This document shows, one piece after another, positions 4,802 through 62,849 of a stretch of DNA of 64,000 nucleotides. Each line of letters opens with the position of its first letter. Position 1 is the stretch's first letter. Made by a program: the position numbers and the translations under genes. The notes under the pieces were generated by a model. It made no database searches. It saw nothing but the letters and a program-made list of their open reading frames with translations, and was not told the origin of the DNA. The stretch lies in the IMG/VR virus record IMGVR_UViG_3300036770_006296, positions 1-64,000 of that record. One strand, given 5' to 3'.

Positions 4802-4810
4802 GATATATAA
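4802..4810 (+). promoter_or_regulatory. Putative phage late promoter GATATATAA
   Basis: Intergenic, just upstream of the ATG at 4828. The same motif recurs before many putative late genes. Confidence 0.6.
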
Positions 4811-4827
4811 TGTAACTATAAAAAGAG

Positions 4828-7596
4828 ATGCCACAGATTAATATACTAAATATTTTACAAGGAGACGCACAGTCTACCATAGTTGATAAATTAAATTATA
4901 ACTTCGATCAAATACTTAGTGCAGGTGGAGGACCACAAGGAGCCCAAGGATTGATAGGTCCTACGGGACCCATAGGACCTCAGGGTCCACAGGGGGTTCA
5001 GGGAGTTCAAGGGCCTTCTGGAACTAAATGGTTCGTACAAGACACGTCACCTGCATCTGGAGGCATAACCGGGGCTAACCCGTGGACATTTCCGACACTT
5101 GGTGATTATTGGTTAGATCCGGACTCGGCAAATCAGGATGTTTATGTGTTCACTGCCACTGGATGGGTTAATACTGGATATGGATTAAATGCAGGGGAGC
5201 TATTTCAAAATGTAACTCCTATTAATATAATTGGTGGAGCAACTGCACAAGCTATATTAATAGCAGGTGCAACTTCAGGTGATAAGGGACTAGTTCTATC
5301 TGATTCTACTATTAATGGATACACTCCAGGTGGAACTGCAATAGACAATCTAAACTTCGAAAATGCAAAGTTAAAGATTGCTACTAAAGATGCCAGAACA
5401 AAACTAATAAGCTTTGCTAGATCTACTTTCGACATAAGCCCAAGTGGATCCGGTTCGACCGGAAGTTTTTACAATCCGTATTTTTCTTGGGATCTTTCTG
5501 TTAATCCATCTGGATCTACCGGCGTAGGATTAGGATTTTATAATCTTAGCTTCGTAAATCCAAAGGGATCTATAGGAATAGTATCCAATGGAGCAACTGC
5601 TGAATCCGGTATAAATATGCTGAGCAGTAGCGAGATAACTGCAACTTCATCTAGTGATAATATCTTACTTAAGACATCTTCAATTAATAAAGGAACTTTT
5701 ATAGATGCCAGTACTAATGGCGGATTTTTAGAGCTTTCTAATAATACATCAACCCCGGTTAATCAAGCTGACGCCCCTATTTTTGCTAACTCTACTGGTG
5801 TAGGATTAGGACTAGGGACAGGACAGTTTAAACATGTTGGTGTTTCTGTTGATAATCGAAGATTGGCCGTTAATGGTAACGTAAGTATAGGAACAGGATC
5901 TGCTCCTCATACATCTTCCTTATTTGTGGGGGAATCAGGAACACCTAATTATAATAAAGGTGTTTTATTTGCAGAGGGACATGCTATGTTCGGATATACA
6001 AACCCGACCGGAGATAGCTCAGGCGGATTACAAACTACTGGCCCTTCTGAATTAGCCGGAAGATATCCTCAGTTATTTGTTACATCCCCTAACTATGGTC
6101 CTGGTATACAAATAAAAACTAAGGGTGCTAATTACTCACCTAGAACTATAATAGGTGACGGCATCTTTGACGGATCTGGAACCGGCCCTAGTATAGTCCA
6201 AGAATTTTTTGCAGGGACTGGGTATAATCTAGGCTCATTTAATCAACCTTTAATAAATTACACACAGAAGATATCAAATGTCTCTAACTCTGGGGCTTCT
6301 GGTCCTGTTTTTTCAGTTACGACATTTGTAAACGGCGGTGTTTATAATTATGTTAATGCAGCATACAGAACTCTTATAGAAACTAAAAATTCTAATAGGA
6401 GATTAGAAATCATGTCCAATGGTACTGGTGGAGGAAACACCATTACTATGGGAACAATAAATAGCTCCTTATTATCAATCTATGGAGCTTCTGGAAGTAC
6501 AACAGGAGGAGTTTCTATCGGTGTTAACTCAAATATATCTCCAGAATTAGCTTCTCTAACAGGTGCAACATTTAGAGTAAACAATAGAGCTAATCACAGC
6601 TTATATGTTACAGGGGTTCAAACAATAGGTACAGATGATCCTCGTTCTTTATTTAATCTCGGAGCGACAGGAAATAATGCTGCTGTTGGCGGAAACTCTT
6701 TACTAAAAGTACACAGAAATTTATATTCAACAACTGTTACGCCATTTGGAAAGGGTACTTTTGCAGGGGGTCTTTCTGTAAACAATTATCCGAATGGAAT
6801 AGAAATAACTTCTATCGTTCCTCTCAATCCTTCTACAGGTCCTAGTGCTAATGATTCGGTTGCTATTGCTGTAGGTGCATCTACCGGAACATCACCTTTT
6901 ACTCAAGCCAACACTACTGGATTCTTCGTTTCCAATTTAGGTACAAACATATCAATAGGTCAGTCGATAGATTATAGCGCTGCGATAGGGGTATCTGGAG
7001 CTGGATCGGATTTTGCTATTAAAGCAAAAGGAGCAGTTGGAGTAACTGGTAACGTTTCAGTAAAAGGTGATGTTGGTATAACTGGTGGCGTTGGTGTAGA
7101 GCTAACAGGTGGTGAATTTTTTGATTGTTTCGGTACAACAGCATCAAATCCAGATATACGAATTACTTCTACTGGAAGGGTGTACAATCCAACTAAAAGT
7201 TTACATCATAACACAACAACAGATCCACCGGGAGGTGTCGTCTATGTAGGACCAGGAGACGAAGTTATTTCATCTGGGGTTTTTAGTTACACCTCATCTG
7301 GAACAGTCGCTGGTACATGGATGAAAGTCGGTCAAGTGATACATGTAGCTGGTAGATGGTCTAGGACCGGATCAGATCAATTTTACCTTCCCGTTCAACC
7401 ACAAGCAGGTTCTTCAATTGGTACTCTATTCGGAGTTTGTTACCTTGCCATATCTCAGCCAAATACTTGCTATGGTGTTAGAGCAATAGCTACCCCTGGT
7501 CCTCCACCGACATTTAATGCACAAATATATAATAACGGGTTGGGTCTTCCGGCTAATGATGATTACTATTTTACTCTTCAATACGTAATAGCATAA
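4828..7596 (+). CDS. Tail fibre-like protein with a collagen-like segment
   Basis: N-terminal G-X-Y run (GPQGAQGLIGPTGPIGPQGPQGVQGVQGPSG) followed by a long G/S/T-rich beta-type body (e.g. GNVSIGTG, GAVGVTGNVSVKGDVGITG). Confidence 0.7.
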   Translation: MPQINILNILQGDAQSTIVDKLNYNFDQILSAGGGPQGAQGLIGPTGPIGPQGPQGVQGVQGPSGTKWFVQDTSPASGGITGANPWTFPTLGDYWLDPDSANQDVYVFTATGWVNTGYGLNAGELFQNVTPINIIGGATAQAILIAGATSGDKGLVLSDSTINGYTPGGTAIDNLNFENAKLKIATKDARTKLISFARSTFDISPSGSGSTGSFYNPYFSWDLSVNPSGSTGVGLGFYNLSFVNPKGSIGIVSNGATAESGINMLSSSEITATSSSDNILLKTSSINKGTFIDASTNGGFLELSNNTSTPVNQADAPIFANSTGVGLGLGTGQFKHVGVSVDNRRLAVNGNVSIGTGSAPHTSSLFVGESGTPNYNKGVLFAEGHAMFGYTNPTGDSSGGLQTTGPSELAGRYPQLFVTSPNYGPGIQIKTKGANYSPRTIIGDGIFDGSGTGPSIVQEFFAGTGYNLGSFNQPLINYTQKISNVSNSGASGPVFSVTTFVNGGVYNYVNAAYRTLIETKNSNRRLEIMSNGTGGGNTITMGTINSSLLSIYGASGSTTGGVSIGVNSNISPELASLTGATFRVNNRANHSLYVTGVQTIGTDDPRSLFNLGATGNNAAVGGNSLLKVHRNLYSTTVTPFGKGTFAGGLSVNNYPNGIEITSIVPLNPSTGPSANDSVAIAVGASTGTSPFTQANTTGFFVSNLGTNISIGQSIDYSAAIGVSGAGSDFAIKAKGAVGVTGNVSVKGDVGITGGVGVELTGGEFFDCFGTTASNPDIRITSTGRVYNPTKSLHHNTTTDPPGGVVYVGPGDEVISSGVFSYTSSGTVAGTWMKVGQVIHVAGRWSRTGSDQFYLPVQPQAGSSIGTLFGVCYLAISQPNTCYGVRAIATPGPPPTFNAQIYNNGLGLPANDDYYFTLQYVIA

Positions 7597-8582: not shown

Positions 8583-8591
8583 GATATATAA
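8583..8591 (+). promoter_or_regulatory. Putative late promoter GATATATAA
   Basis: Intergenic, immediately before the ATG at 8595. Confidence 0.55.
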
Positions 8592-16429: not shown

Positions 16430-16438
16430 GATATATAG
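16430..16438 (+). promoter_or_regulatory. Putative late promoter GATATATAG
   Basis: Intergenic, upstream of a gene with the packaging-tag-like N-terminus. Confidence 0.55.
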
Positions 16439-18362: not shown

Positions 18363-20365
18363 TGGCTGGAATAAAATATTTAACGGACATATACGAAAAA
18401 AAAGGAAAGTCCTTTATTGAAAGCCTTTTCAATAAAAATTTAACTGTAACGGAAAATCTAGACGGTCCTTCTTTTTCTTTTGAAAGAGATTTTACTGGCG
18501 ATAACATATCTTTCTATAAAAAGGATCAAGATAATCCTATAACCAAGGTGGATAGGATATTAATGAGATATTACGAAAAGCCCATAAGCTATATAGAATC
18601 TCTATCTCTTGAAATCACAGATCAACTTCCTAAGGGATGGAGATTCGGAATGGTTTACTTTCCTAACAAAAAGCCAGTCAGAATTGAATACGATAGGATA
18701 CCAAAGAATCATCTTGTTTTAACACATGTTGTTGTTAGGGATGAATTTGGTGATATCATTAAAAATTTACAGGATAGGAATGAGCTCGATGAATGGGCGG
18801 ACAAGCTAGGAGTTGAAAGATCACCTATTATATTCCAAGGTAAACTTGATAGGGATCAAAAGATAGCTATAATGGATTTCCTTTCCACCCCATTAGCAGA
18901 TCTTAAAAATAAATTCCAGACCTCTAGTTTTAGTAACTATCTAATTTCAATCTTAAATAAAAAAGTAGAAAGAACAACACTTGGTAAGGATTTACAAGGT
19001 GAGATAGATTCCCTAGTTTTTAGATTCGAGGATGAAGACGGAAAAGAGGAAACTGTTTTAGCAAAAATGGTTGACCCTATTTTTCATGAGATAAACAGAA
19101 GCAGAAAAGTTACTCAAACATCTTATTTTCCTAGTGATGTTTATTCTTTGTGTCTTATAGATGTAATGAATTTTATACTAGAGACAGGAGTAGAAAACTT
19201 TATGGCTGAAGGCAATGATCCAGAGGAAAGATACATCAGTTTTGTTTTTGATGTATTTAAGAAGTTTGTATACGAGGAGGGTGAGAAATATGTAGGTGCA
19301 GATTTTCAAAAACCAGAATACTTGAAAACCGAAGGATTTGAAATAAATAAGGATTTAATAACTGACGAAGAAATTTTAAAGTCTATAGAAGACGACGAAG
19401 TTTATATAGACATTCTACAAATGATCCTTAACTCTTTTAGAAAGCTTAAAAGAAAACCACATGGATTTTTTACAGAGGGGCTAATCCAGCAATTTAATAT
19501 GCTAGTTGAAGATATTGCTAGCTATATAAACGCCAAAAAGAAAGATTTAGTTGAAGAGTCTTTAGGAGTTCCCAGCTTTGTTTGGTTTAAAAAAGTCGGT
19601 AGTAAATTTAATCCGATAATGAGTGACGAGGATGAAATAGACGAACTAGAAGAAATCATAGAAGGTTCTTCTTCTGGAGATGTTCTACCTCTTAATGAAT
19701 CTGAAATCCCAGAGACTATAACTGAAGACGAGAAGAAAGAAGACGCTTCAGAATTTTTCTCATTTAAGGATTTTAAAAAGGTAGTAGCTACACACAAAGA
19801 AAAAAAGAAGATAAAGATATTAAACGAGAATAGCCAGAAGGTAAATATTGTAATAGGTAAATTTCAGCCATTTAACAATGGGCATTTAAAAATGTGTACA
19901 AGATTAAAGAAGGAAAACAATTTACCGGTATTTCTATGTGTAGTACATCCTGGAAGTGAGCCAGGATCTAAATATCCATTCTCTGAGGATTTAATAAAAA
20001 AATCTATAGGTGCTTTAACATCAGAGAACAACAAACTTTTTGCTGGATATGAAATAATTCCGTCCAACCTTTTGGAGGATGCTCTAAATGCAGTAGTAAA
20101 ACATGCTAATCCTGCTTCTATATGTATAGGGGAAAGGGATTTTGAAAATATGATTCTTCAAAGAGAATGGGTAAGAAATAAATATGATTTAGAAGGAGGA
20201 GATATAGAAATATACAAAACACCGCAATGGTCAAATAATAATGATATTAGAACCTATATAAAAGATGGGGATTTCCAGCAATTTAAAAGTAAAGTCCCTA
20301 AATCTGTAGCGGTTCTTTTCAATGAATTTACTAAACAAATAAACGGATCCGAGAAGGATATATAA
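18350..20365 (+). CDS. Fusion of an RNA-ligase-like nucleotidyltransferase fold (degenerate) and a HIGH-superfamily cytidyltransferase-like domain
   Basis: N-terminal VTENLDG in the position of ligase motif I (K-x-D-G), and later IDSLVFRF/LAKMVD. C-terminal IVIGKFQPFNNGH resembles GRFQPxHxGH. Confidence 0.6.
   Translation: MFKLMAGIKYLTDIYEKKGKSFIESLFNKNLTVTENLDGPSFSFERDFTGDNISFYKKDQDNPITKVDRILMRYYEKPISYIESLSLEITDQLPKGWRFGMVYFPNKKPVRIEYDRIPKNHLVLTHVVVRDEFGDIIKNLQDRNELDEWADKLGVERSPIIFQGKLDRDQKIAIMDFLSTPLADLKNKFQTSSFSNYLISILNKKVERTTLGKDLQGEIDSLVFRFEDEDGKEETVLAKMVDPIFHEINRSRKVTQTSYFPSDVYSLCLIDVMNFILETGVENFMAEGNDPEERYISFVFDVFKKFVYEEGEKYVGADFQKPEYLKTEGFEINKDLITDEEILKSIEDDEVYIDILQMILNSFRKLKRKPHGFFTEGLIQQFNMLVEDIASYINAKKKDLVEESLGVPSFVWFKKVGSKFNPIMSDEDEIDELEEIIEGSSSGDVLPLNESEIPETITEDEKKEDASEFFSFKDFKKVVATHKEKKKIKILNENSQKVNIVIGKFQPFNNGHLKMCTRLKKENNLPVFLCVVHPGSEPGSKYPFSEDLIKKSIGALTSENNKLFAGYEIIPSNLLEDALNAVVKHANPASICIGERDFENMILQREWVRNKYDLEGGDIEIYKTPQWSNNNDIRTYIKDGDFQQFKSKVPKSVAVLFNEFTKQINGSEKDI
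20357..20365 (+). promoter_or_regulatory. Putative late promoter GATATATAA overlapping the upstream stop codon
   Basis: The motif ends in the TAA of the preceding gene and precedes the peptidase gene. Confidence 0.55.
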
Positions 20366-20382: not shown

Positions 20383-21243
20383 ATGAAAAGAATATTATCC
20401 TTTAATGACTTTGCAATTTTTGAATATAACACTTTTAACTACACTCCAGGAGATAAGTTAAATGAAGCTATATACCTAGACGAAAGAGAGAAAAGACCAG
20501 TAGACGAAGCGGCACTCAAGAAAATGAAAGCCTGCGTGTTTTTCTTAAACGGATCTTATCCGTTTTTTTCATCAATGCTATCTAGATTGATAATCAGAGA
20601 AAACAGAAATCTTAGATTTAAAACAATGGCAACTGACGGTGTTAGTATACACTATGATCCTGATTTTGTAAATGAGCACAGCGATGCAGAGATAATGTGG
20701 GTAATAGCACATGAGGTTTTACATAATACTCTACTTCACTTCCTAAGATGCCCTAAAGATAAAACTAAAGCGGGTGTATGGAATGTTGCAGCAGATTATG
20801 CACTTAACCAGGTATTAACTCCGATAGACCCAGGAACAATAAACACCGCTAAACCTGAACCTGTATCTAAGGGAGGAGTAGGAAAAATGGTGAAGGGTTC
20901 TTTATATCCAGGATGCGGGCACGTTTCTTACGATCGTGAGTTTGTTAACAGAAGTGCAGAATGGATATACGAAAAACTTTTAGCTAATGGATATGTTCCT
21001 GAGCCAGGTGAAGATACACCACCACCCCCACCACCCCCACCACCTCCACAGGATCCTGTAGTTGGTGATATCATATATGATAAAGATAATGATTCTTATG
21101 GTATAATTAAATCTATAGACGATTCTTCAGGCGAGCTTGAGTATGATCCTATACCTAAAAATAAGGTTAAAGAATACTTACAAAGAAAAGCTAAGGGTGA
21201 GAATATATTGGGAGACGATATAGAAAAAGAATTAGACTTCTAA
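20383..21243 (+). CDS. DUF2201-N-like HExxH metallopeptidase (stand-alone N-half)
   Basis: TMATDG..IHYDPDFV, VIAHEVLHNTLLH and WNVAADYALNQ, then a poly-Pro linker and a short SH3/KOW-like C-terminus. CTS-like N-terminus MKRILSFNDF. Confidence 0.8.
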   Translation: MKRILSFNDFAIFEYNTFNYTPGDKLNEAIYLDEREKRPVDEAALKKMKACVFFLNGSYPFFSSMLSRLIIRENRNLRFKTMATDGVSIHYDPDFVNEHSDAEIMWVIAHEVLHNTLLHFLRCPKDKTKAGVWNVAADYALNQVLTPIDPGTINTAKPEPVSKGGVGKMVKGSLYPGCGHVSYDREFVNRSAEWIYEKLLANGYVPEPGEDTPPPPPPPPPPQDPVVGDIIYDKDNDSYGIIKSIDDSSGELEYDPIPKNKVKEYLQRKAKGENILGDDIEKELDF

Positions 21244-21256
21244 TTTAATACGTTCT

Positions 21257-22240
21257 ATGAAAGCTAAGATAACTGACGTTAAAATACAAAAACTCCAGGA
21301 AGATGGAGGAGGGGGAGGAGGAAAGGGCCCAAGGAATCCTAAAAATGTAGAAGTTTGGCCAGGAGATGTTAATGATGTACCGGATAGGGACGAAGATGGA
21401 AACATCAAAGGAGATGACGTAGAAGGAGATTTTAAAAGATATTCCGGACCTAAAACAGATCCTGGATATAATCCAGGAGAAGTACTTAGACCTGGAGAAT
21501 TAGGGGATGTTGGAGATGGTGGAAATATAGACCCAGATAAGATAGCTGAGGAATGGGATGATATAACTAGAATAGCAACCACGGGAGGAAGTGCTCAACC
21601 ACCTCCTTCTATAAGAAGAGCTTTAACTAAACTAAAAGAGCCTGTTATTGACTGGAGAGCTGAGTTGGATAAATTTATAGATCAGGCAATATCCAAATCT
21701 AAGTACACATTGCCGGTTAGAAGATTTTTAGGAGCTGGGAAAGCACAGTATGGATATAAGAAATATAAAGAGGATTTTCAAAATATAGTTATTGCTATAG
21801 ATACATCCGGTTCTATTATTGATCCTTTATTAAAACAATTTATTTCAGAGGTCATTAAAATAACCGAAATATACAAACCCGATGAAACGACAATAATATA
21901 TTGTAGCGACAATATAGATAATATAGATACATTCGGTGTGGGTGAAGAGCCAGATTTAAATAAGATAGCATCAACTGGAGGAAACTATGAAGGATTCCAT
22001 CCACCTTTTAAATGGGTACAAAAAAATATGATTGACGAGGGAAAAACACCTTCGGTTTTTATTTATTTTACTGATGGATATGCAGATTTTCCACCACCCG
22101 AATATTATGATATAGAGAATTATTCAGATAGGTGTATTTGGGTACTCATTTCTTTTAATGATGAACCATTTCCTAGACCCGTTCCTTTTGGTGAAAGAAT
22201 AGATATAGTTTTAGCCAATAATAACGTAAAAAGAATTTAA
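21257..22240 (+). CDS. VWA-domain protein (DUF2201 C-half-like), copy A
   Basis: IDWRAEL, MIDAS motif AIDTSGSI, and TGGN...IYFTDG. Confidence 0.8.
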   Translation: MKAKITDVKIQKLQEDGGGGGGKGPRNPKNVEVWPGDVNDVPDRDEDGNIKGDDVEGDFKRYSGPKTDPGYNPGEVLRPGELGDVGDGGNIDPDKIAEEWDDITRIATTGGSAQPPPSIRRALTKLKEPVIDWRAELDKFIDQAISKSKYTLPVRRFLGAGKAQYGYKKYKEDFQNIVIAIDTSGSIIDPLLKQFISEVIKITEIYKPDETTIIYCSDNIDNIDTFGVGEEPDLNKIASTGGNYEGFHPPFKWVQKNMIDEGKTPSVFIYFTDGYADFPPPEYYDIENYSDRCIWVLISFNDEPFPRPVPFGERIDIVLANNNVKRI

Positions 22241-22243
22241 TCT

Positions 22244-23251
22244 ATGAAAGCAAAAATAACAGGCGTAAGAATTCAGCAAATGAAAGAATCCGGTGGTGGT
22301 GGTGGGGGAGGAGACGTAGAGGGGGACGACTTCGGTATCAGAAATCCTGAAAATGTCGACGAGTGGAAAGACGATGTTCCTGATGGGGATACTCCTGAAA
22401 GAGACAAAGATGGTAAAATAAAAGAGGAGGATTCCGAGTTCAAAAGATCTGATAGATCCGGAGGTGGTGGAGGTCCAGCTCCTGACGGATACAATCCTGG
22501 TGAAGTTCTTAGACCTGGGGAGTTGGGGGATCTTGGTGGAGACAGTGGACTTAACGGAGAAGCATTAGCTGAAGAATGGGAAGATATTACTAGAATAGCT
22601 GCAGCAGCGGGTAACGTTCCAGCATCTATAAAAAGAGCACTGACCAAAGTTAAAAGACCTGTTATTGATTGGAAGGCTGAATTAGCTAAGTATATAGACG
22701 AGGCAATAGCTAAATCTAAATATACATTACCAGCTAGAAGATTTTTAGGAGCGGGAAAAGCACAATATGGATATAAGAAATACAAAGAGGATTTCGAAAG
22801 CGTGGTTGTTGCAATAGATACTTCCGGATCTATCACTAGAGAAATGATAGAACAATTTTTAGGGGAGGTTATGAATATAACACAAGCATATACCCCTAAG
22901 AAAACCATTATATTATACTGCGACACCCAAGTTTACGAGCCGGATATATTAGAGCCAGGAGACACTCCTGATTTTAATAAAATAGCCGGAGGTGGTGGAA
23001 CATATTTTTGGCCTCCATTCAAATGGGTAGAAAGAAATTTAATAGAAGAAGGCGAAAAACCGACAGTATTTATATACTTTACTGACGGTGAAGCAAACTT
23101 CCCGTCTGCGGATGACTATGAGATTTCTCAATATGAAAATAGATGTATTTGGGTATTTCTCACATTTAATGATGAACCCTATCCAAACCCGCAACCTTTT
23201 GGCGAGAGAATAGACATAGTACTTGCCAATAAGAATGTAAAAAGAATATAA
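22244..23251 (+). CDS. VWA-domain protein (DUF2201 C-half-like), copy B; tandem paralog
   Basis: AIDTSGSI, GGGGT.F and IYFTDG; long near-identical blocks shared with copy A (e.g. RRFLGAGKAQYGYKKYKEDF, YNPGEVLRPGELGD). Confidence 0.8.
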   Translation: MKAKITGVRIQQMKESGGGGGGGDVEGDDFGIRNPENVDEWKDDVPDGDTPERDKDGKIKEEDSEFKRSDRSGGGGGPAPDGYNPGEVLRPGELGDLGGDSGLNGEALAEEWEDITRIAAAAGNVPASIKRALTKVKRPVIDWKAELAKYIDEAIAKSKYTLPARRFLGAGKAQYGYKKYKEDFESVVVAIDTSGSITREMIEQFLGEVMNITQAYTPKKTIILYCDTQVYEPDILEPGDTPDFNKIAGGGGTYFWPPFKWVERNLIEEGEKPTVFIYFTDGEANFPSADDYEISQYENRCIWVFLTFNDEPYPNPQPFGERIDIVLANKNVKRI

Positions 23252-23257
23252 AAAGTA

Positions 23258-23266
23258 GATATATAA
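23258..23266 (+). promoter_or_regulatory. Putative late promoter GATATATAA
   Basis: Intergenic, before the AAA+ gene. Confidence 0.6.
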
Positions 23267-23284
23267 AGAAAATAAAAAAATAAA

Positions 23285-26506: not shown

Positions 26507-26541
26507 AATCCCCGATGATATATAATCTATCGGGGATTTTT
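26507..26541 (+). terminator. Intrinsic terminator hairpin with GATATATAA in its loop
   Basis: AATCCCCGAT (26507-26516) / ATCGGGGATT (26529-26538) is a perfect 10-bp inverted repeat followed by a T-run. Confidence 0.7.
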
Positions 26542-27581: not shown

Positions 27582-27968
27582 GTGCAAAGAATTAAGATAA
27601 TACAGGAAGAATATGCTAATGATCCTTGGAAGGTTTTAGTATGTTGTATATTACTTAATCAAACTAGTAATAAACAAGTAAGACCTTTAATAGAAAATTT
27701 CTTTAAAAAATGGCCAAATTCTAAATCCTTGATATGGGAGGATGATTTGGTCATTTCCGATTTTATAAAAACCACAGGATTCCAAAATGTGAAAGCAAAG
27801 AGAATAAAAAATTTCTCCAGTGCATGGGAATCAGGAGTAAGAGATCCTTTTAAATTTCCTGGTATAGGAGATTATGGAAGGGAAGCCTGGAGGATCTTTG
27901 TAACCAAAGACATATCATTTATTCCTAAGGATAAGAAGCTTAAAATGTATTTAGAATCGATTCAGTAA
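27582..27968 (+). CDS. MBD4-like HhH-GPD DNA glycosylase (minimal catalytic domain)
   Basis: IQEEYANDPWKVLVCCILLNQTS...FFKKWP...GFQNVKAKRI..FS...PGIGDYGREAWRIF parallels the MBD4 glycosylase domain. Confidence 0.75.
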   Translation: MQRIKIIQEEYANDPWKVLVCCILLNQTSNKQVRPLIENFFKKWPNSKSLIWEDDLVISDFIKTTGFQNVKAKRIKNFSSAWESGVRDPFKFPGIGDYGREAWRIFVTKDISFIPKDKKLKMYLESIQ

Positions 27969-27978
27969 TATATACTAC

Positions 27979-28866: not shown

Positions 28867-28885
28867 CTATTATATATTCCTTTTT

Positions 28886-30328: not shown

Positions 30329-30793
30329 ATGGCAAACACAGATAACAAATGTTCAGATCTTCCGGTGGAGGATTTTTACACAGGGTCGGAAGACACTTTA
30401 GGATTAGTTTATAACAAACAAAAAGAACTTCAGGAAAGATATGGGTTCGATTTCAAGGATTGGTCCATCAAGCAAATAGCAGATTTTTGGATGGTCAATA
30501 AGCATGCTCTTGGCGACGAGTTGAACGAAATGTTTGATGCACTAGGAGGAATCAATGATGGTATAGGATCTGCTGGTTGGAAATACTGGAAAGGTGACAA
30601 CAAAAAAACGGAGACTATGAAAATCTCAGATCTTTCAGAAGCCGACAAATTAGAGCTATATTATGAATGGATAGATGGATTACATTTTTACATGAATTTC
30701 GCTATTTCTATCGGTATGACAAGTAAGGATATTGTTAATCTTTATATGGCAAAAAATTCTGAAAATCACGACCGTCAGGAGAGAGGATACTAA
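30329..30793 (+). CDS. Dimeric all-alpha dUTPase/dCTPase (T4 gp56/dUTPase_2-like)
   Basis: [21 protein letters not shown] and [16 protein letters not shown]. Confidence 0.8.
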
Positions 30794-30812
30794 TATATAT
30801 AATAAAAAATTC

Positions 30813-31793: not shown

Positions 31794-31843
31794 TTTAGTA
31801 ACAGATCCCAATCGAATATATATAAGGCATATAATTAACAACT

Positions 31844-36589: not shown

Positions 36590-36598
36590 GATATATAA
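36590..36598 (+). promoter_or_regulatory. Putative late promoter GATATATAA
   Basis: Intergenic, before a CTS-tagged ORF. Confidence 0.6.
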
Positions 36599-39317: not shown

Positions 39318-39326
39318 GATATATAC
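39318..39326 (+). promoter_or_regulatory. Putative late promoter GATATATAC
   Basis: Immediately before the ATG at 39331. Confidence 0.55.
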
Positions 39327-42727: not shown

Positions 42728-42736
42728 GATATATAC
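42728..42736 (+). promoter_or_regulatory. Putative late promoter GATATATAC
   Basis: Immediately before the ATG at 42740. Confidence 0.55.
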
Positions 42737-42739
42737 ATT

Positions 42740-44287: not shown

Positions 44288-44315
44288 AAACTTTAATCCA
44301 TTATCCCAGTATAAT
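44287..44315 (+). promoter_or_regulatory. GAAAC-N16-AGTATAAT promoter upstream of the topoisomerase II A subunit, clamp and polB C-half
   Basis: Bipartite motif with conserved spacing. Confidence 0.6.
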
Positions 44316-44338
44316 TTTCATCAGTGAAAATATTTTAA

Positions 44339-45754
44339 GTGGATAAGAGGATAACAATTTCAGATCAGATAAATCAGGATTACCGTAAGTACGCATTATA
44401 CGTTATTCAAAGCAGAGGCATTCCTAATTTCTATGATGCACTAACACCTGTACAAAGACTAATTCTTCAGAATTCCCCGAGTAACTTCAAAAAAACAGTA
44501 GGTGTAATAGGTGAAGTTTTTAGTACTGGCTTATACCATCATGGTGATTCTTCAATGGCTCAAGCCATATCCAAGTTAGCGAGGCCTTTTTCGTGTGCTG
44601 AACAGATATTATTGGGAGATGGATTTTTTGGAAGTCCAGTCAATCCAGTTCCATCTGCTCCTAGATACACCCAGGTAAAAATCTCTAATAAGTATAAAGA
44701 GATAATAGAAAAATATAAGGATCTAAATGTACCCAACGAGGAGGGTGGATTTGATTGGATCCATGTTGACTATCCTGTGGGTCTTTCCACTCACATTGTT
44801 GGGATAGCAGTTGGATATAAATCTAACGTGCTTCCACGAAAGCCTGAAGATATAGTTGCATACATAACAGGAAATAAATCTAAGAAATTAAAACCATATT
44901 TTAGGGGATTTAAAGGAAAGGTAACAAGAATGGATTCTCTTAAATCAGCTTGGCTTATAGAAGGGGACACTGAAATAGATGTTACAACTAGAACATTCAA
45001 GATAAACTCTATATCACCCCTTCAGAGATATGAATCTTTTTTTATTAGGCTCAACAACATTCTGGAAAGAAAATCCCTTAATTACAAGATGGATAATTTC
45101 TCAACTGATGAAGTTAAGATCACGATAAAGTTTAGGTGCACAGATCAGGAATTCAAGGAAGTCTCAGATCTAATAGCTAAAGAAACAAAACAGATAGTTA
45201 CTGAAAATATAGTTTTCGTGCGGGATGGATCGGTCTTGGAATATGATTGTATAGAAGATTATTTAGAAGACTTCATTGTACACAGGGAAAGAACTATTTT
45301 AAAAAGATATGAGAGGGATCTACTTTATCTTGACGATGAATTAGAATTTTTAGAAGCTAAGCTTAAATTTCTTATTTTTATGCAGGAAAGGAAGAGAGGA
45401 GTTGATGAGGTTTCAGCATTTCTTAGCGATTATAAAAGGGAAATATCCAGAAGGCTAGAATCCATATCTTTAATAAAGCTAACAAAGGAGGAAATAATTA
45501 AGACAAAAGAAGAAATTAATTCAATAAAATCTGATATAAAGATTAAGAATCAAGAAATAAAGAAACAAAGAGATAGAGTTAAAGTTATCGAAAAAGAAAA
45601 TTCTTTATTAAAAAAGAAAACGACTTCAAGAACAACTTCGCTCTTAGGAGAATTAAAAGAAGAATTTCATAATGGAATAAGAATATTTGATCCAGAAGAA
45701 GAAATAATAGAAGAAGTAGAACAAGAAAACGAATTAAATATAGAAAATGAGTAA
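44339..45754 (+). CDS. Type IIA DNA topoisomerase, breakage-reunion subunit (GyrA/ParC; T4 gp52-like)
   Basis: YRKYALYVI..RGIP...DALTPVQRLIL, YHHGDSS, GDGFFGS and SAPRYT (catalytic Tyr); no gyrase CTD. Confidence 0.92.
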   Translation: MDKRITISDQINQDYRKYALYVIQSRGIPNFYDALTPVQRLILQNSPSNFKKTVGVIGEVFSTGLYHHGDSSMAQAISKLARPFSCAEQILLGDGFFGSPVNPVPSAPRYTQVKISNKYKEIIEKYKDLNVPNEEGGFDWIHVDYPVGLSTHIVGIAVGYKSNVLPRKPEDIVAYITGNKSKKLKPYFRGFKGKVTRMDSLKSAWLIEGDTEIDVTTRTFKINSISPLQRYESFFIRLNNILERKSLNYKMDNFSTDEVKITIKFRCTDQEFKEVSDLIAKETKQIVTENIVFVRDGSVLEYDCIEDYLEDFIVHRERTILKRYERDLLYLDDELEFLEAKLKFLIFMQERKRGVDEVSAFLSDYKREISRRLESISLIKLTKEEIIKTKEEINSIKSDIKIKNQEIKKQRDRVKVIEKENSLLKKKTTSRTTSLLGELKEEFHNGIRIFDPEEEIIEEVEQENELNIENE

Positions 45755-46515: not shown

Positions 46516-47685
46516 ATGGAAGAAATAGATTACATGTCAATGAGCTTGGAAGAGCTCAATCAAAAACTGCAGGAGTTCCAAAAAAAATCCTCCGATTTTT
46601 ACAATACTGAACAGGGCATTAAACTAACTCTTAATAGTATATACGGAGCGACGGGAAATCAATACTTTGCTCTTTTCAATCCGGACGTAGCAGAGAGTGT
46701 AACTCTACAAGGTCAAGATATATGGAAATTTGCAGAGAAAATAGTTAACAAGTACTTCAATGAGATGTGGCACCTTGACACTGAGCTTCATGAGAAGATG
46801 GGTGTTAGGAACGTAAGAAAGATTACTCTTGATTTTATTATATACGGGGACACTGACTCTAACTATATAAACCTTGGAGCAGTAATGGACTCTTGTGAAT
46901 TTGATTACGATCCTTTTGATTTCGTAAAAAAACTCAACGATTATAGGCTCAAGGACTACATAAAAAAATGTTACGACATCTATTCTAAGAAATGGAATAC
47001 TGAGAACTATCAAGACTTTGAACTGGAAAGTTTATCTTATGCAGGTATATTCTTAGGAAAAAAGAAATACGTACTACACATAGCATGGCAAGATCCTAAT
47101 AAGGATTTATTCCCTAGACTATCTAAAATTAAATCCACAGGTATCGAATTAGCACAGGGAGGTACTGCTCCTTTTGCTAGGGAGAAACTAACATTCCTCC
47201 TTAGACATATCTTTGAAAAGGGTAAGTCATTTGATATAAGGGAATTTGTAAAGATACTGAAGGATATCAAGAATGAATTTAAAGTACAAAGTCCGGATCA
47301 AATATCAATAGGTACTTCAGTTAACAATATAGAAAAGTTCATAGTAAATGATACAAGTAAGTTCGAGGTTGCTAAGGGATGTCCAATGCACGTTAGAGCT
47401 GCTGGATATCATAACTATATCTTGAATAATTCTAAACATAAAGCAAAGTACAGCTTAATAAGATCCTCTGAGAAGATAAAATACTATTACGTTAAAGTTA
47501 ACAACGAAAGGGAGAATAACGTATTCGGATATCTTAATGGTTCTTATCCCTACGAGTTTGCTCCTCCTGTTGATTTCGACGAGCAGTTTAATCGAGTTAT
47601 CCTTGATCCTATAAATAGATTCATTGAAGCTATGGGATATACACCGCTTTCTCCTAATCTTTTACTAGTTAGGGCTCTTTTTTAA
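46516..47685 (+). CDS. polB: Family B DNA polymerase, C-terminal half (motifs B and C, thumb)
   Basis: KLTLNSIYG (motif B), YGDTDS (motif C), KKKYV, KSTGIE and HVRAA. Confidence 0.9.
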   Translation: MEEIDYMSMSLEELNQKLQEFQKKSSDFYNTEQGIKLTLNSIYGATGNQYFALFNPDVAESVTLQGQDIWKFAEKIVNKYFNEMWHLDTELHEKMGVRNVRKITLDFIIYGDTDSNYINLGAVMDSCEFDYDPFDFVKKLNDYRLKDYIKKCYDIYSKKWNTENYQDFELESLSYAGIFLGKKKYVLHIAWQDPNKDLFPRLSKIKSTGIELAQGGTAPFAREKLTFLLRHIFEKGKSFDIREFVKILKDIKNEFKVQSPDQISIGTSVNNIEKFIVNDTSKFEVAKGCPMHVRAAGYHNYILNNSKHKAKYSLIRSSEKIKYYYVKVNNERENNVFGYLNGSYPYEFAPPVDFDEQFNRVILDPINRFIEAMGYTPLSPNLLLVRALF

Positions 47686-47728: not shown

Positions 47729-47737
47729 GATATATAA
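47729..47737 (+). promoter_or_regulatory. Putative late promoter GATATATAA
   Basis: Intergenic, before AAA+ gene 2. Confidence 0.6.
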
Positions 47738-57775: not shown

Positions 57776-57857
57776 CTTGTTATGCTTTTTATAACTATAT
57801 ATCTCTTCCTAGGTAAGATTTTAATGTATGGATATATAAGGTAAATAATATATAGTT

Positions 57858-58013
57858 ATGAAATTTAAAAATTCATGGAAATCCAACACTAAACAATGGG
57901 ACAAGCTTCAAATAAATGTTAGAGTTGGAGCAGTTACAGTATTTAGTCTCGACCTTGACTGGTCTAAAAGAAAGTTTGCTCTTTCTATAATGAACTTTAA
58001 AATAAGCAACTAA
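57858..58013 (+). CDS. Small hypothetical protein; absent from the ORF track
   Basis: 51 aa, MKFKNSWKSNTKQWDKLQINVRVGAVTVFSLDLDWSKRKFALSIMNFKISN, behind GATATATAA (57831-57839) and abutting the next gene. Confidence 0.55.
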   Translation: MKFKNSWKSNTKQWDKLQINVRVGAVTVFSLDLDWSKRKFALSIMNFKISN

Positions 58014-58014
58014 A

Positions 58015-58521
58015 ATGAGTTCAATAAAAAGATTTGAACAGTTTCTTAATGAAGAAAAATGGATCAAAGGCGCTATAGAACATCCAGGAGCTCTTAGAAG
58101 ACATTTTCATAAGAAGGAGGGAGAAAAGATCACTAAAACTGAAATAGGTGATGAAATTGCCGATCTTATGAGAAAAGATATGGACAAGAAAAAACCTGGT
58201 GCTCAGTTAGGTAAAAGAGATGCTACTCTTTACAAAAGACTTCAATTAGCAAAAACCCTCAGAGGTATGAATGAGGATCACGATGAGATGGATAATTATA
58301 TGTTCTTTGCAAATGTTTCTAATATAAAAAGAATGTGTGAGGAGATATTACAAATGGATCCTTCACAAGTTGATTCGCTTCTTAGTGACGGACACGGATG
58401 GGCTACTGATCACATAGCAACTTCTAAAGATGATGTTGAAGAAGTTTATGGATTTTTAAAATCCTCAATGGAATTACATCATGATGAAGAGGGAATGATC
58501 TCCGATGGAGAGGAATGTTAA
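58015..58521 (+). CDS. Hypothetical protein with CTS-like N-terminus
   Basis: MSSIKRFEQFLNEE leader; basic KWIKGAIEHPGALRR domain; internal MNE site; acidic C-domain. Confidence 0.55.
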   Translation: MSSIKRFEQFLNEEKWIKGAIEHPGALRRHFHKKEGEKITKTEIGDEIADLMRKDMDKKKPGAQLGKRDATLYKRLQLAKTLRGMNEDHDEMDNYMFFANVSNIKRMCEEILQMDPSQVDSLLSDGHGWATDHIATSKDDVEEVYGFLKSSMELHHDEEGMISDGEEC

Positions 58522-58537
58522 GATAAAAAATAAAAAA

Positions 58538-60694
58538 ATGAAATACCTTTCTTTATTTGATGATTATAAATTATCCGAAGAAGAATCCTACCTGTTTGAT
58601 AATGATTCATTGTTTGAGTCTAAAATAAACCAGATGATGTCACTTAGACAAAATGGGTGTGCAGCTGGTATGGATCTTAATGAATTTAAGTCAGCTTTTA
58701 GAAGAGATTCTTTACTTGAGAATAGGGGATATGAAGAATCTGAGGCCTTATTAGAAAAAGCCCATAGCGTATATGAACTAGGAATGCTACAAGAATCTAA
58801 ATCACATTGGTTTGATGATGATAAACCCCTTATGTATGAACACTCCAAGGGGGTTATTTCTTATCTAGAATTTGAAGGTAATATACTTTTATTTAAAGAG
58901 GGTGAAGCTTTTGCAATCACTGAAAAATCGCTAAGGATGCTTAAAGATAACGATCAATCAATCAATGAGGATCTTTTTAATGAAGTGATAGGAGGTAAAT
59001 TATATGAGTATTCATTTAGCGATTTCTGTGGAGATGTGTGGAGTGGAGTAAAATCAGGAGCTAAATGGGTAGACAGAAACATAGTGCAGCCTGCTAAAAA
59101 AGTTGTTACTGAATATGTAATAGATCCTTTAAAACAATTGTGGGATAATCTAACTGATGGCGCTAAAAAACTTTACCAATTTGCCAAGAAAGTTATGAAT
59201 GCTATAGCATCTTTTGTTTCTGAGAATTGGCAAGACATTCTATTCTATGTTTCTGTCGCTTTACAGGTTATTGCCGGTATAATAGCTTTTATTCCTGCAG
59301 CTGGTCAAGTCGCAGGACCTGTTCTGTTGATAATAGCAGGAGCTATACAAATAGGAACCGGAGCGTATGATATTTACGAAGGTGTAAAAATAACGAGAGA
59401 GTGCCCAACTGATCCTATAAAAAAAGCTGCACCGGAATTTATAAAAGGTGGAGCTAAACTTCTGGGAGGTGGTGTTAGTTTGTTATTAGGTATACACGAT
59501 GTATCTACTAGTGCTAAAGCAGCAATACCAGGAGCAGCAGCTACCAGTACTGCAGTTGCAGTTCCTGCAAAGGCTTGGGTTAAAACAACTACTGCAGGAT
59601 TAAGCAAGGCTGGAGCAGCTGTGGGTATGTTCGAAACCCTTATTAAATTTTTAATTGATTCTGCTGGAACTGCTGCTAGTAAAGCCGTTACCAAAAAAGT
59701 AGCAACTACCGGCGGAAAATATGTTGCACAGAAAACTTCACTACTAGCTGGTGAAGCCCTAACTAAAGCAGGAGCTGAGATACTGGGAAAAAAATTAGGG
59801 GATAAAGCTAATGAATCTGCAATTCCTATGTTATGTATAGCTGGACAATACGCTTTAGGGTGGTTATGGGACATTATATTATCTGCAGTTTCTGGAATAG
59901 GTAAATTAATTAATGGCATACTGGATTTACCAACTAGAACAGTTAAAGCCATAGACAATTTTAATAGAGAATATTCCGATAGTGCATTTGGATGGATAGT
60001 AGGAGGAGCATTAAAGCTTTTTGTGAAACCAGTTGCTAAAGTTCTCTCCTGGTTTTGTGAAAATAAAATAAAACCCTTAGTTAAGCCCGTTACTGACTGG
60101 ATGATTGGATTAGGTAAACATAACAAATCCATAAAGCAATCAGTGGAGGGTAACGCATCTTTAAAAGCTGCAGTTAGCGGAGGAAAAATACCTCAACCTA
60201 AGGGAGGAATACCACAAGAAAAAGTTACTGTAACAGAAAAAGATAAAAGTAATCTTGCTAAAATAATGGCGTCTGAATCTGGGAAAGCTTCAGATAAATC
60301 CATAGCTAAATCAAGTGGATTTTACAATGAAAAATTCAAGAAAATTCAATCGGATATACAATCGAAGATTAAGAAACAACAGGAAAAACTTTATAAAGAT
60401 AAATTCCCAGGCATTTTAAAGAATGAAGCTAAAGGTAAATGGCACACCCTAAAGGATGGAACTTTATGTTTCGAATTTAAATCAGATTCTGCAAAAGGCT
60501 CTGTAATACTTTATAATAACGGCAGGTATATGGTTAGCGACGGTCCTAATAAAGGGGCCAAAGGAAACTATACAGCAAAAAATAATATCGATATACAACC
60601 ACCTAAAGGAGGATTTAAGAATCCAAAGAAGGAAGGCAAGAAGAACGAATCTAGAAACTATATAAGAACTTTCGAATCCTTCTCTTTCTCCTAA
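58538..60694 (+). CDS. Large CTS-tagged protein with hydrophobic/amphipathic helices, paralog A (ejection/pore-forming candidate)
   Basis: MKYLSLFDD leader (ATG at 58538); W-spaced amphipathic helices; TM-like ILFYVSVALQVIAGIIAFIPAAGQVAGPVLLIIAG. Confidence 0.5.
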   Translation: MKYLSLFDDYKLSEEESYLFDNDSLFESKINQMMSLRQNGCAAGMDLNEFKSAFRRDSLLENRGYEESEALLEKAHSVYELGMLQESKSHWFDDDKPLMYEHSKGVISYLEFEGNILLFKEGEAFAITEKSLRMLKDNDQSINEDLFNEVIGGKLYEYSFSDFCGDVWSGVKSGAKWVDRNIVQPAKKVVTEYVIDPLKQLWDNLTDGAKKLYQFAKKVMNAIASFVSENWQDILFYVSVALQVIAGIIAFIPAAGQVAGPVLLIIAGAIQIGTGAYDIYEGVKITRECPTDPIKKAAPEFIKGGAKLLGGGVSLLLGIHDVSTSAKAAIPGAAATSTAVAVPAKAWVKTTTAGLSKAGAAVGMFETLIKFLIDSAGTAASKAVTKKVATTGGKYVAQKTSLLAGEALTKAGAEILGKKLGDKANESAIPMLCIAGQYALGWLWDIILSAVSGIGKLINGILDLPTRTVKAIDNFNREYSDSAFGWIVGGALKLFVKPVAKVLSWFCENKIKPLVKPVTDWMIGLGKHNKSIKQSVEGNASLKAAVSGGKIPQPKGGIPQEKVTVTEKDKSNLAKIMASESGKASDKSIAKSSGFYNEKFKKIQSDIQSKIKKQQEKLYKDKFPGILKNEAKGKWHTLKDGTLCFEFKSDSAKGSVILYNNGRYMVSDGPNKGAKGNYTAKNNIDIQPPKGGFKNPKKEGKKNESRNYIRTFESFSFS

Positions 60695-60720
60695 GGAATA
60701 TATAAAGTAAAATGATAAGA

Positions 60721-62823: not shown

Positions 62824-62840
62824 AAACAATTTATTAATTA

Positions 62841-62849
62841 GATATATAA
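62841..62849 (+). promoter_or_regulatory. Putative late promoter GATATATAA
   Basis: Intergenic, before the ATG at 62866. Confidence 0.6.

What the first reader, a model, noticed from the sequence alone, without database searches (positions are those of the whole stretch)
4802..62849. Phage late-promoter motif (G/A)ATATATA marks the putative late gene set
The motif sits in short intergenic gaps just upstream of starts at 4802, 8583, 16430, 20357, 23258, 26517, 27967, 30792, 31814, 36590, 39318, 42728, 47729, 57831, 60696 and 62841. It also precedes both minus-strand genes (28870-28879, 57795-57803). Nearly all downstream genes are structural or carry the packaging-like tag; nrdB is the exception. 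This parallels the single-element T4 late promoter TATAAATA read by gp55, but with a different core, which implies a divergent late sigma factor (inference).
Basis: partly seen in the sequence, partly recalled or inferred. Interest (0 to 1): 0.6.

Follow-up and report, generated by a model that had tools for sequence, protein, structure and literature searches.

The report
T4-type late promoter, GATATATA variant
An eight-base signal, (G/A)ATA(T/A)ATA, sits just upstream of about 50 genes of this giant freshwater Bacteroidota phage and is most likely its version of the phage T4 late promoter; a shortened T4-type late sigma factor (gp55 homologue) is encoded in close relatives.

Summary
All 18 listed sites exist; four coordinates are off by a base. 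The raw count in the window is not remarkable (25 against 17.5 expected). The placement is. GATATATA is the most enriched 8-mer in the 45 nt upstream of ORF starts: 36 of 49 copies in the 206-kb record against 1.7 expected from AT-matched shuffles, and it is strand-specific.

The same holds in relatives. It is also the top upstream 8-mer in a 248-kb relative (44 of 56 copies), and it is kept at orthologous genes while the flanks diverge.

Only positions 1 and 5 tolerate change, so the consensus is (G/A)ATA(T/A)ATA, two tolerated changes from T4's TATAAATA. No -35-like element accompanies it.

In relatives it precedes the head-protease, portal and tail-tube genes. In this genome it precedes tail-fibre-like genes and many genes with a T4-like capsid-targeting N-terminus.

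This record holds no gp55. A collinear relative encodes a 118-aa gp55 homologue 41 kb beyond where this record ends, and the motif is enriched only in gp55-bearing relatives.

Differences from T4: the gp55 homologue lacks the clamp-binding tail, no gp33 or gp45 was detected, and a quarter of the sites lie exactly 4 nt from the start codon, which predicts leaderless mRNAs.

No transcript data exist. Verdict: a new variant of a known kind.

The parts
4802..4809 (+). GATATATA, 18 nt before ATG 4828 (922-aa tail-fibre-like protein with a weak, sub-threshold collagen match)
   Evidence: The orthologue in G001 keeps the motif at the same spacing.
8583..8590 (+). GATATATA, 4 nt before ATG 8595 (777 aa, unknown); predicted leaderless
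   Evidence: The G001 orthologue has AATATATA, also at 4 nt.
16430..16437 (+). GATATATA, 18 nt before TTG 16456 and 21 nt before ATG 16459 (201-aa tagged protein)
   Evidence: Conserved at the G001 orthologue.
20357..20364 (+). GATATATA, 18 nt before ATG 20383 (286 aa, tagged, DUF2201 metallopeptidase-like)
   Evidence: Conserved in G001.
23258..23265 (+). GATATATA, 19 nt before ATG 23285 (534-aa tagged AAA ATPase)
   Evidence: Conserved in G001.
26517..26524 (+). GATATATA in the loop of a hairpin (ccccgat...atcgggg) followed by a T-run; promoter role doubtful
   Evidence: Sequence. The same hairpin with the same loop is present in G001.
27967..27974 (+). AATATATA, 4 nt before ATG 27979 (193 aa, tag-like); predicted leaderless
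   Evidence: The 12-mer AATATATACTAC is identical in G001.
28871..28878 (-). AATATATA, 4 nt before GTG 28866 (101-aa tagged protein, minus strand)
30792..30799 (+). AATATATA, 13 nt before ATG 30813 of nrdB (ribonucleotide reductase small chain)
   Evidence: G001 has AATATATA 46 nt before its nrdB.
31815..31822 (+). AATATATA, 21 nt before GTG 31844 (108 aa, unknown)
36590..36597 (+). GATATATA, 17 nt before ATG 36615 (160-aa tagged protein)
   Evidence: Conserved in G001.
39318..39325 (+). GATATATA, 5 nt before ATG 39331 (248-aa tagged protein); predicted leaderless or nearly so
   Evidence: Conserved in G001 at the same spacing. Invariant among strains in three metagenome runs.
42728..42735 (+). 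GATATATA, 4 nt before ATG 42740 (515-aa tagged protein with collagen-like repeats); predicted leaderless
47729..47736 (+). GATATATA, 20 nt before ATG 47757 (497-aa tagged AAA ATPase)
57796..57803 (-). GATATATA, 20 nt before ATG 57775 (178 aa, minus strand); one of a back-to-back pair in a divergent gap
   Evidence: Conserved in G001.
57831..57854 (+). GATATATA (57831) and AATATATA (57847), 19 and 3 nt before ATG 57858, at the head of the operon 57858-60694
   Evidence: Conserved in G001.
60697..60704 (+). AATATATA, 7 nt before ATG 60712 (703 aa, tag-like)
   Evidence: Not present at the G001 orthologue.
62841..62848 (+). GATATATA, 17 nt before ATG 62866 (504-aa tagged protein)
   Evidence: Conserved at the orthologue in G001 and L018.

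Best explanation
The octamer (G>A)ATA(T>A)ATA is the promoter of the phage's own late transcription class. It is the local version of the phage T4 late promoter TATAAATA.

Proposed mechanism:
- It is a single -10-type element with no -35 partner.
- It is read by the host (Bacteroidota) RNA polymerase core carrying a phage-encoded minimal sigma, a 118-aa homologue of T4 gp55.
- Early genes are instead driven by about 60 host-type sigmaA promoters (T-tract, 17 nt, then TAnnTT(T/A)G). These promoters also precede two phage copies of a sigmaA-like gene.
- Transcription is predicted to start about 5 nt downstream of the octamer. The roughly one quarter of sites lying exactly 4 nt from the ATG would then give leaderless mRNAs, and the rest would give A-rich leaders of about 13 nt without a Shine-Dalgarno sequence.
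- The class covers virion genes and a large set of genes whose products begin with a T4-like capsid-targeting peptide. Each of these genes is inserted with its own promoter among the replication genes.

What is shown: the placement, orientation, conservation and tolerance pattern of the motif; the absence of a -35 signal; its position before structural genes in relatives; the gp55 homologue in relatives; and the co-occurrence of motif and gp55.

What is inferred: promoter activity, late timing, the start site, leaderless mRNAs, and the presence of the gp55 gene in the unsampled part of this very genome.
For: Placement. GATATATA is the top upstream 8-mer in G000 (36 of 49 copies, 1.66 expected from AT-matched shuffles). 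It is also top in G001 (44 of 56 by the k-mer ranking; 45 occurrences against 1.86 expected from shuffles) and in G008 (26 of 33). The reverse complement is not enriched.

Orthologues. Among 128 orthologue pairs the motif is upstream in both genomes for 17 pairs (Fisher odds ratio 37, P 9e-11). The flanks are only about 41% identical.

Tolerance. Only positions 1 (G>A>T) and 5 (T>A) vary. GATAAATA shows the same spacing modes, and T4's TATAAATA lies within this envelope. In T4 too the first position is the variable one, there is no -35 conservation, and there are about 50 sites (PMC2988020).

No upstream partner. No position upstream of the octamer carries information.

Divergent gaps. Divergent intergenic gaps of only 26-62 nt hold one copy facing each gene and nothing else in common.

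Genes served. In G001 the motif precedes the head maturation protease (12 nt upstream), and the capsid gene has the variant AATAAATA. In G008 it precedes the portal gene (19 nt) and the tail tube gene.

Tag and class separation. Tagged genes are nine-fold enriched behind the motif (P 6e-11), and the motif almost never coincides with the early-type promoter.

gp55 homologue. It matches phrog_234 at E 1.5e-15 and T4 gp55 by BLASTP at E 1e-8. It lies in G008, which is collinear with G000 over 148.7-206.3 kb.

Co-occurrence. GATATATA exceeds its reversed control in the gp55-bearing G007 and G008 (38 against 18; 33 against 11). It does not in five relatives without gp55, two of them complete genomes. 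It is again the top upstream 8-mer in 63 and in 16 loci around gp55 homologues of 85-100% and 64-71% identity.
Against: - No transcript 5' ends or time course are available. No RNA run holds the phage.
- The gp55 gene is not in this record or in G001. Its presence in this phage is inferred from a collinear relative.
- The gp55 homologue lacks the C-terminal clamp-binding part, and no gp33 or gp45 was detected in any relative. T4's activation mechanism therefore may not apply.
- nrdB carries a variant site, and motif-headed genes sit among replication genes with few terminators. The class may not be strictly late.
- A divergent full-length sigma at 172511-173392 is an alternative reader. Its region 2.4 is altered, and motif variants precede its own operon.
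- The weak pyrimidine-then-A signal at positions 4-5 after the motif was not seen again in a second, largely orthologous set of sites.
Confidence: 0.7

Rival explanations
1. The octamer is a promoter, but it is read by the divergent full-length sigma70-family protein encoded at 172511-173392 (here called sigma-3) rather than by the gp55 homologue. Timing could then be middle rather than late.
For: - Sigma-3 has an altered -10 recognition helix (WHIRKNIL where host-type sigmas have WWIRQAIM) and a changed region 4.2.
- Its orthologues were found only in motif-bearing relatives.
- Its two-gene operon is preceded by GATAAATA in this genome and by AATATATA in a relative.
Against: - The motif lies within two tolerated changes of the site that gp55 reads in T4.
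- Loci around gp55 homologues down to 64% identity keep the motif, whereas sigma-3 diverges faster (64-77% identity between the same genomes).
- A sigma that depends on its own promoter type needs another way to be switched on.
Confidence: 0.15
2. The octamer acts in RNA rather than in DNA. It would be an endonuclease processing site or an A/U-rich translation signal that defines short 5' ends close to start codons.
For: - The spacing to the start codon is sharply fixed at 4 nt or about 18 nt (P 2.5e-16 for the 4-nt class).
- One copy sits in a hairpin loop (26517).
- Primer-extension ends at T4 late sites cannot always be told apart from processing (PMC2988020).
Against: - In divergent gaps of 26-34 nt, each gene has a copy facing it. 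Both transcripts must start there, and nothing else is shared.
- Most genes inside operons lack the motif.
- It resembles the T4 late promoter and co-occurs with gp55.
Confidence: 0.07
3. The octamer is a promoter read by the host sigmaA or by the phage's sigmaA-like copies, so it is not a separate temporal class.
For: The phage encodes host-like sigmaA copies (52-60% identical to Bacteroidota rpoD) whose DNA-contact helices are of host type.
Against: - GATATATA does not fit the Bacteroidota -7 box TAnnTTTG and has no -33 partner.
- A separate, very regular host-type promoter class exists, and the two classes are mutually exclusive.
- Relatives with the sigmaA-like gene but without gp55 show no enrichment.
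Confidence: 0.05
4. The pattern is a by-product of A+T-rich intergenic DNA, or of duplicated gene cassettes that share a 5' end.
For: - The window-wide count is not above shuffles.
- Many downstream genes share an N-terminal tag, so some could be paralogues.
Against: - Enrichment is about 20-fold over dinucleotide shuffles of the same upstream windows, and the reverse complement is not enriched.
- The flanks and leaders carry no conserved sequence.
- The motif also precedes untagged, unrelated genes: protease, portal, tail tube and fibre.
Confidence: 0.01

Closest known systems
Phage T4 late promoter TATAAATA with gp55, gp33 and the gp45 sliding clamp (Geiduschek and Kassavetis 2010, PMC2988020)
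   Same: - An 8-bp A+T-only box with no -35 element.
- The first position is the variable one.
- About 50 copies per genome, in both orientations, before virion genes and before internal-protein genes that carry a capsid-targeting peptide.
- A gp55-family minimal sigma is present in the lineage.
- 6 of 8 bases are identical, and 7 of 8 for the variant GATAAATA.
   Different: - G is preferred at position 1 and T at position 5.
- The gp55 homologue is 118 aa and stops before T4's clamp-binding C-terminus.
- No gp33 or gp45 family member was detected.
- The host is Bacteroidota, and the leaders lack a Shine-Dalgarno sequence.
- A quarter of the sites lie 4 nt from the ATG.
In-silico late-promoter variants of other T4-related phages: KVP40, 44RR and S-PM2, and Aeh1 with a changed -13/-12 (cited in PMC2988020)
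   Same: The same kind of finding: a near-T4 octamer deduced from its position before late genes in a genome that encodes gp55.
   Different: - Those phages have full-length gp55 and identifiable gp33 and gp45.
- This clade is far more distant; phmmer with T4 replication and transcription proteins finds nothing.
- This clade also encodes several full-length sigma70-type factors.
Group 2 jumbo phages of Iyer et al. 2021 (PMC7824862): gp23-type capsid, family B polymerase, no own RNA polymerase, phage-encoded sigma factors; subgroup 2.2 includes the Prevotella Lak phages and Tenacibaculum PTm1
   Same: - The gene content fits: gp23-like capsid, T4-type prohead protease, gp32-like SSB, UvsY-like protein, Dda-like helicase, topoisomerase II.
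- Both a minimal and RpoD-like sigma factors are present.
   Different: - That survey reports a gp33 orthologue in group 2 phages; none was found here.
- As far as I read it (searched passages only), it names no promoter for such phages.
Bacteroidota housekeeping promoters (-33 TTTG, -7 TAnnTTTG; from my own knowledge of Bayley et al. 2000)
   Same: The phage's second promoter class (TCATTTTTTT, 17 nt, then TAnnTT(T/A)G) fits this type.
   Different: GATATATA itself does not fit it and has no upstream partner.

Membership tests
T4-type late transcription system | 8-bp A+T box of the TATAAATA type as the only promoter element | tested here: met
   The consensus is (G/A)ATA(T/A)ATA. Single changes at positions 2-4 and 6-8 abolish the upstream placement. 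GATAAATA behaves like GATATATA.
T4-type late transcription system | No conserved -35 element | tested here: met
   In 103 aligned sites from two genomes, no position from -60 to -2 reaches 0.25 bit. Back-to-back sites occur in 26-34-nt divergent gaps.
T4-type late transcription system | Sites precede virion (late) genes | tested here: met
   The motif precedes the head maturation protease in G001 and the portal and tail tube genes in G008. In the window it precedes the tail-fibre-like gene at 4828.
T4-type late transcription system | gp55-family sigma encoded by the phage | tested here: inconclusive
   Absent from this 206-kb record and from G001. Present in the collinear relatives G008 and G007 (phrog_234 E about 1e-16; BLASTP to T4 gp55 E 1e-8), in a genome part that this record does not reach.
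T4-type late transcription system | gp33 co-activator | tested here: not met
   phrog_254 gives no match in seven related records, including two complete genomes. A very divergent or unrelated substitute cannot be excluded.
T4-type late transcription system | gp45 sliding clamp, and a clamp-binding C-terminal epitope on gp55 | tested here: not met
   phrog_223 gives no match. The gp55 homologue covers profile positions 25-105 of 181 and ends at residue 118.
T4-type late transcription system | Transcription start about 6 nt downstream of the box; dependence on replication and on gp55 | not testable with these tools
   No RNA run holds the phage. The one run labelled RNA-Seq looks like DNA and is sparse.
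Bacteroidota sigmaA promoter (-33/-7) | TAnnTTTG box with a T-rich -33 element about 19 nt upstream | tested here: not met
   GATATATA does not match the box and has no upstream partner. A different element of the genome does meet this definition.
Leaderless mRNA | Transcript begins at the A of the start codon | not testable with these tools
   This is only predicted. 26 of 103 sites lie exactly 4 nt from the start codon (P 2.5e-16), and the spacing is kept at orthologues.

The most novel reading that the evidence does not exclude
In this widespread freshwater clade of roughly 350-kb Bacteroidota phages, late transcription may run on a stripped-down T4 system. A 118-aa gp55 would act alone on GATATATA boxes, without the gp33 co-activator and without coupling to the sliding clamp. 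About a quarter of the late mRNAs would be leaderless and start exactly at the AUG. The same promoter would drive some 50 diverse cargo proteins that are addressed to the capsid by a T4-like targeting peptide.
Probability: 0.3. Interest if true: 0.65.

Novelty: new variant of a known kind. Interest (0 to 1): 0.5.

Why it matters
- It provides a working transcription map, with a host-type early class and a gp55-type late class, for an uncultured and widespread group of giant phages of freshwater Bacteroidota. The DNA was seen in metagenomes from 14 studies.
- It extends the T4 late-promoter principle to a lineage so distant that T4 proteins no longer find their counterparts by direct sequence search.
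- The truncated gp55, and the missing gp33 and gp45, raise the question of whether clamp-coupled activation is dispensable. That bears on how gp55 relates to full-length sigma factors.
- The motif, together with the N-terminal tag, offers a simple way to list candidate injected or packaged proteins in such genomes.

Tried and rejected
- Nearest cultured phages by DNA: none.
- phmmer of T4 gp55, gp33, gp45, gp44, gp62, RegA, RpbA and DsbA against six-frame translations of G000 and G001: nothing.
- gp55, gp33 and gp45 PHROG profiles on this record: nothing.
- Terminator-like hairpins directly upstream of the sites: found at only 2 of 49 and 3 of 56 sites with a crude detector, so there is no terminator-promoter pattern.
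Its -10 and -35 contact helices are those of Bacteroidota sigmaA. Relatives that have it but lack gp55 show no motif enrichment.
- A distinct upstream motif in 20-kb loci around distant sigma-1 homologues: nothing clear.
- A 'middle' promoter shared by the replication genes, sought as words common to orthologous upstream regions: none emerged.
- Sequencing runs: no RNA holder. Laying contigs of four runs on 38800-44799 gave no start-site information. It showed only that the sites at 39318 and 42728 do not vary among strains.
- DNA overlap between gp55-bearing contigs and G000 or G001, to join them physically: none.
- The pyrimidine-then-A signal at positions 4-5 after the motif: not reproduced in a second set of sites.
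Full report
**What the window is.** The window is the first 64 kb of a 206,617-bp IMG/VR virus record with 34.9% G+C.

Family scans identify these genes:
- tail-fibre-like proteins at 147-4784 and 4828-7596;
- a T4-like replication set: gp32-type SSB at 12190, primase at 13174, UvsY-like protein at 14411, helicase at 14881, a family B polymerase split between 28919-30325 and 46516-47685, nrdB at 30813 and nrdA at 32278, and topoisomerase II subunits at 37511 and 44339;
- many proteins without any family.

The SSB is closest to uncultured huge phages and the Prevotella Lak phages. A phage sigma gene is 52-60% identical to Bacteroidota rpoD. Leaders are A-rich without a Shine-Dalgarno sequence. 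The host is therefore a member of the Bacteroidota. The DNA occurs in freshwater, subsurface, estuary and drinking-water metagenomes from 14 studies.

**The observation.** Seven more copies lie in the window, six of them inside genes.

The raw count is not significant: 25 copies against 17.5 +/- 4.7 from shuffles. The signal lies in position and strand.
- In the whole record, GATATATA is the most enriched 8-mer in the 45 nt upstream of ORF starts: 36 of its 49 copies.
- Dinucleotide shuffles of those same A+T-rich windows give 1.66 +/- 1.26 (maximum 6 in 300). For the window alone the figures are 11 observed against 0.43.
- The reverse complement occurs 3 and 0 times in the same windows.

**Anatomy.**
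- In an alignment of 103 sites from two genomes, no position upstream of the octamer is informative apart from a weak G just before it.
- Single-base variants are found upstream of genes only for position 1 (A 45%, T 35% of copies) and position 5 (GATAAATA 35%). Changes at positions 2-4 and 6-8 leave 0-21% upstream, against 77% for GATATATA.
- GATAAATA shows the same spacing modes. The consensus is therefore (G>A)ATA(T>A)ATA.
- T4's TATAAATA differs only at the two tolerated positions.
- The distance from motif end to start codon is bimodal. Exactly 4 nt occurs at 26 of 103 sites (P 2.5e-16 against a uniform spread). A second mode lies at 17-20 nt.
- Divergent gene pairs separated by only 26-62 nt have one copy facing each gene, for example 131895/132290, 140608/141165, and in the window 57239/57858.

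**Conservation.**
- A relative, G001 (248 kb; 56% identity on a 703-aa protein), shows the same top 8-mer: 44 of 56 copies upstream.
- Of 128 reciprocal-best orthologue pairs, 17 carry the motif upstream in both genomes, 14 in one and 97 in neither (odds ratio 37, P 9e-11).
- The upstream flanks are only about 41% identical, and the longest shared upstream word is usually the motif itself.

**What the genes are.**
- The structural module is missing from this record but present in relatives. In G001 the T4-type head maturation protease (Peptidase_S77, phrog_207) has GATATATA 12 nt upstream, and the gp23-type capsid gene that follows it has AATAAATA.
- In G008 a portal gene has GATATATA 19 nt upstream and a tail tube gene has AATATATA 10 nt upstream.
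- In this record, 27 of 50 motif-headed genes begin with a peptide of the form M-(K/R)-x-(I/L)-x-x-F-x-(E/D)-F-(L/I/V)-N-E, against 30 of 276 other ORFs (P 6e-11).
[quoted passage not shown] The gene at 132290 begins MIQHYEEFIAEK.
- With a T4-type prohead protease in the lineage, these are plausibly packaged proteins. That would require late expression.
- Within the window, 'structural' can be argued only for 4828 and for 42740, which has collagen-like repeats. nrdB carries the weaker AATATATA form 13 nt upstream.

**A second promoter class.** About 60 copies of TCATTTTTTT, 17 nt, then TA(C/T)ATT(T/A)G precede small ORFs between 83 and 123 kb, followed by a conserved GTAACCAATTAAA leader. This matches the Bacteroidota -33/-7 type. 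The class almost never coincides with GATATATA: only 1 of 50 motif-headed genes also has it. It also precedes two phage sigmaA-like genes. The genome therefore has a host-type early class and a separate phage-specific class.

**Who reads the octamer.**
- This record has no match to the gp55, gp33 or gp45 profiles.
- It has three full-length sigma70-family genes. Sigma-1 (148717) has host-type DNA-contact helices, and relatives that carry its homologue do not share the motif. Sigma-3 (172511) is divergent in regions 2.4 and 4.2 and remains a rival.
- The decisive lead came from two closer relatives. G008 is collinear with this record from 148.7 kb to its end (G008 1-59 kb; 35-97% protein identity among the best matches, mostly above 55%) and continues for a further 57 kb.
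- That extension holds the sheath, tube and portal genes, a 209-aa ECF-like sigma and a 118-aa protein. The 118-aa protein matches the T4 gp55 family (phrog_234 E 1.5e-15, profile positions 25-105 of 181) and T4 gp55 itself (BLASTP E 1e-8, 27% identity over 103 residues). G007 has the same gene.
- This protein was found on more than 120 viral contigs at 64-100% identity.
- Around it, GATATATA is again the top upstream 8-mer: 119 of 185 copies in 63 loci and 17 of 41 in 16 loci with the more divergent gp55. The loci are related to one another, so these are not independent trials.
- Counts of GATATATA against its reversed control are 38/18 and 33/11 in the gp55-bearing G007 and G008. In five relatives without gp55, two of them complete, they are 30/34, 22/46, 22/31, 5/19 and 12/12.
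- The motif therefore travels with gp55 and not with the sigmaA-like gene.

**Genome size.** None of the extra 57 kb of G008 matches G000 or G001, and G001 adds 84 kb of structural and other genes ahead of the window. The real genome is therefore probably about 350 kb or more, and the completeness estimate of 81% is too high.

**Comparison with the known system.** T4 late promoters are an 8-bp TATA box about one helical turn upstream of the start. They have no -35 conservation, about 50 sites per genome, and A in place of T at the first position in nine of them. They are read by gp55 and activated through gp33 and the gp45 clamp (PMC2988020).

The present system shares the box, the lack of a -35 element, the copy number, the gene set and a gp55 homologue.

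It differs in these ways:
- the preferred bases at two positions;
- the short gp55 without the clamp-binding end;
- the absence of detectable gp33 and gp45;
- the 4-nt spacing class, which predicts leaderless transcripts if initiation occurs about 5 nt after the box.

Iyer et al. (PMC7824862) place Bacteroidota megaphages in a group of T4-like jumbo phages that carry sigma factors of minimal or RpoD-like type. In the passages I searched they name no promoter for such phages.

**Limits.**
- Nothing here shows transcription. No RNA data set holds the phage.
- Gene calls are my own simple ORF calls, so some starts are wrong (nrdB, for example).
- The gp55 gene is inferred for this phage from a collinear relative.
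- The site at 26517 sits in a hairpin loop and may have another role.

**Verdict.** The finding is a new variant of a known kind of system in an uncultured phage clade, with a few unusual features that are worth testing.

Noticed in passing
G000 83,000-123,000 (outside the window; examples at 85677, 95099, 109152). In the window, weaker copies at 54325 and, on the minus strand, 63573.: About 60 copies of a 35-nt element, TCATTTTTTT-N17-TA(C/T)ATT(T/A)G, lie in front of small ORFs. The element is often followed by a GTAACCAATTAAA leader and preceded by a CTGGGGAACCCCAG hairpin. It looks like a Bacteroidota -33/-7 early promoter in a stem-loop-plus-promoter cassette, reminiscent of the early promoter/stem-loop cassettes of T4-type phages.
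   Followed up: partly
Window examples: 16459, 20383, 23285, 28866(-), 36615, 39331, 42740, 47757, 58015, 62866. Best T4 match: G000 132290.: More than 50 ORFs begin with a shared peptide of the form M-K-x-I-x-x-F-x-E-F-(L/I/V)-N-E. It resembles the T4 capsid-targeting sequence MKTYQEFIAE and ends in the T4 prohead-protease cleavage pattern (L/I)-x-E. The carriers include AAA ATPases, a metallopeptidase-like protein and a collagen-repeat protein, which suggests a very large set of packaged proteins.
   Followed up: partly
window 28919-30325 and 46516-47685: The family B DNA polymerase is split into two genes 16 kb apart: an exonuclease and N-terminal part, and a C-terminal polymerase part. Both are about 90% conserved in the relative.
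   Followed up: no
G000 148717-149577, 112075-920 and 172511-173392; G008 93201-93830 and 100629-100985: The lineage encodes up to five sigma-like proteins: two sigmaA-like copies driven by early-type promoters, one divergent full-length sigma, a 209-aa ECF-like sigma and the 118-aa gp55 homologue.
   Followed up: partly
window 26505-26545, and G001 near 109929: A conserved hairpin has GATATATA in its loop and a T-run after it, so the motif sits inside a terminator-like structure.
   Followed up: no
whole record: The record is less complete than the stated 81%. Collinear relatives add at least 57 kb beyond its 3' end (sheath, tube, portals, gp55) and 84 kb before its 5' end (protease, capsid, baseplate-like genes). 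This implies a genome of about 350 kb or more.
   Followed up: partly
window 43231-43693: The collagen-like GXY repeat region of the gene at 42740-44287 attracts very many partial contig matches and length variants in metagenome runs. It is a variable repeat tract.
   Followed up: no
window 20383-25701: A tagged DUF2201 metallopeptidase-like gene, two paralogues matching the same PHROG family (phrog_1314, labelled 'HNH endonuclease') and a tagged MoxR-type AAA ATPase lie together. A second tagged AAA ATPase lies at 47757. This looks like a MoxR-type chaperone set addressed to the capsid.
   Followed up: no
G008 102300-105592 (L155 16300-19592): Two adjacent paralogous portal-protein genes (537 and 556 aa, both matching phrog_213 at about 1e-57) occur in the relative.
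   Followed up: no
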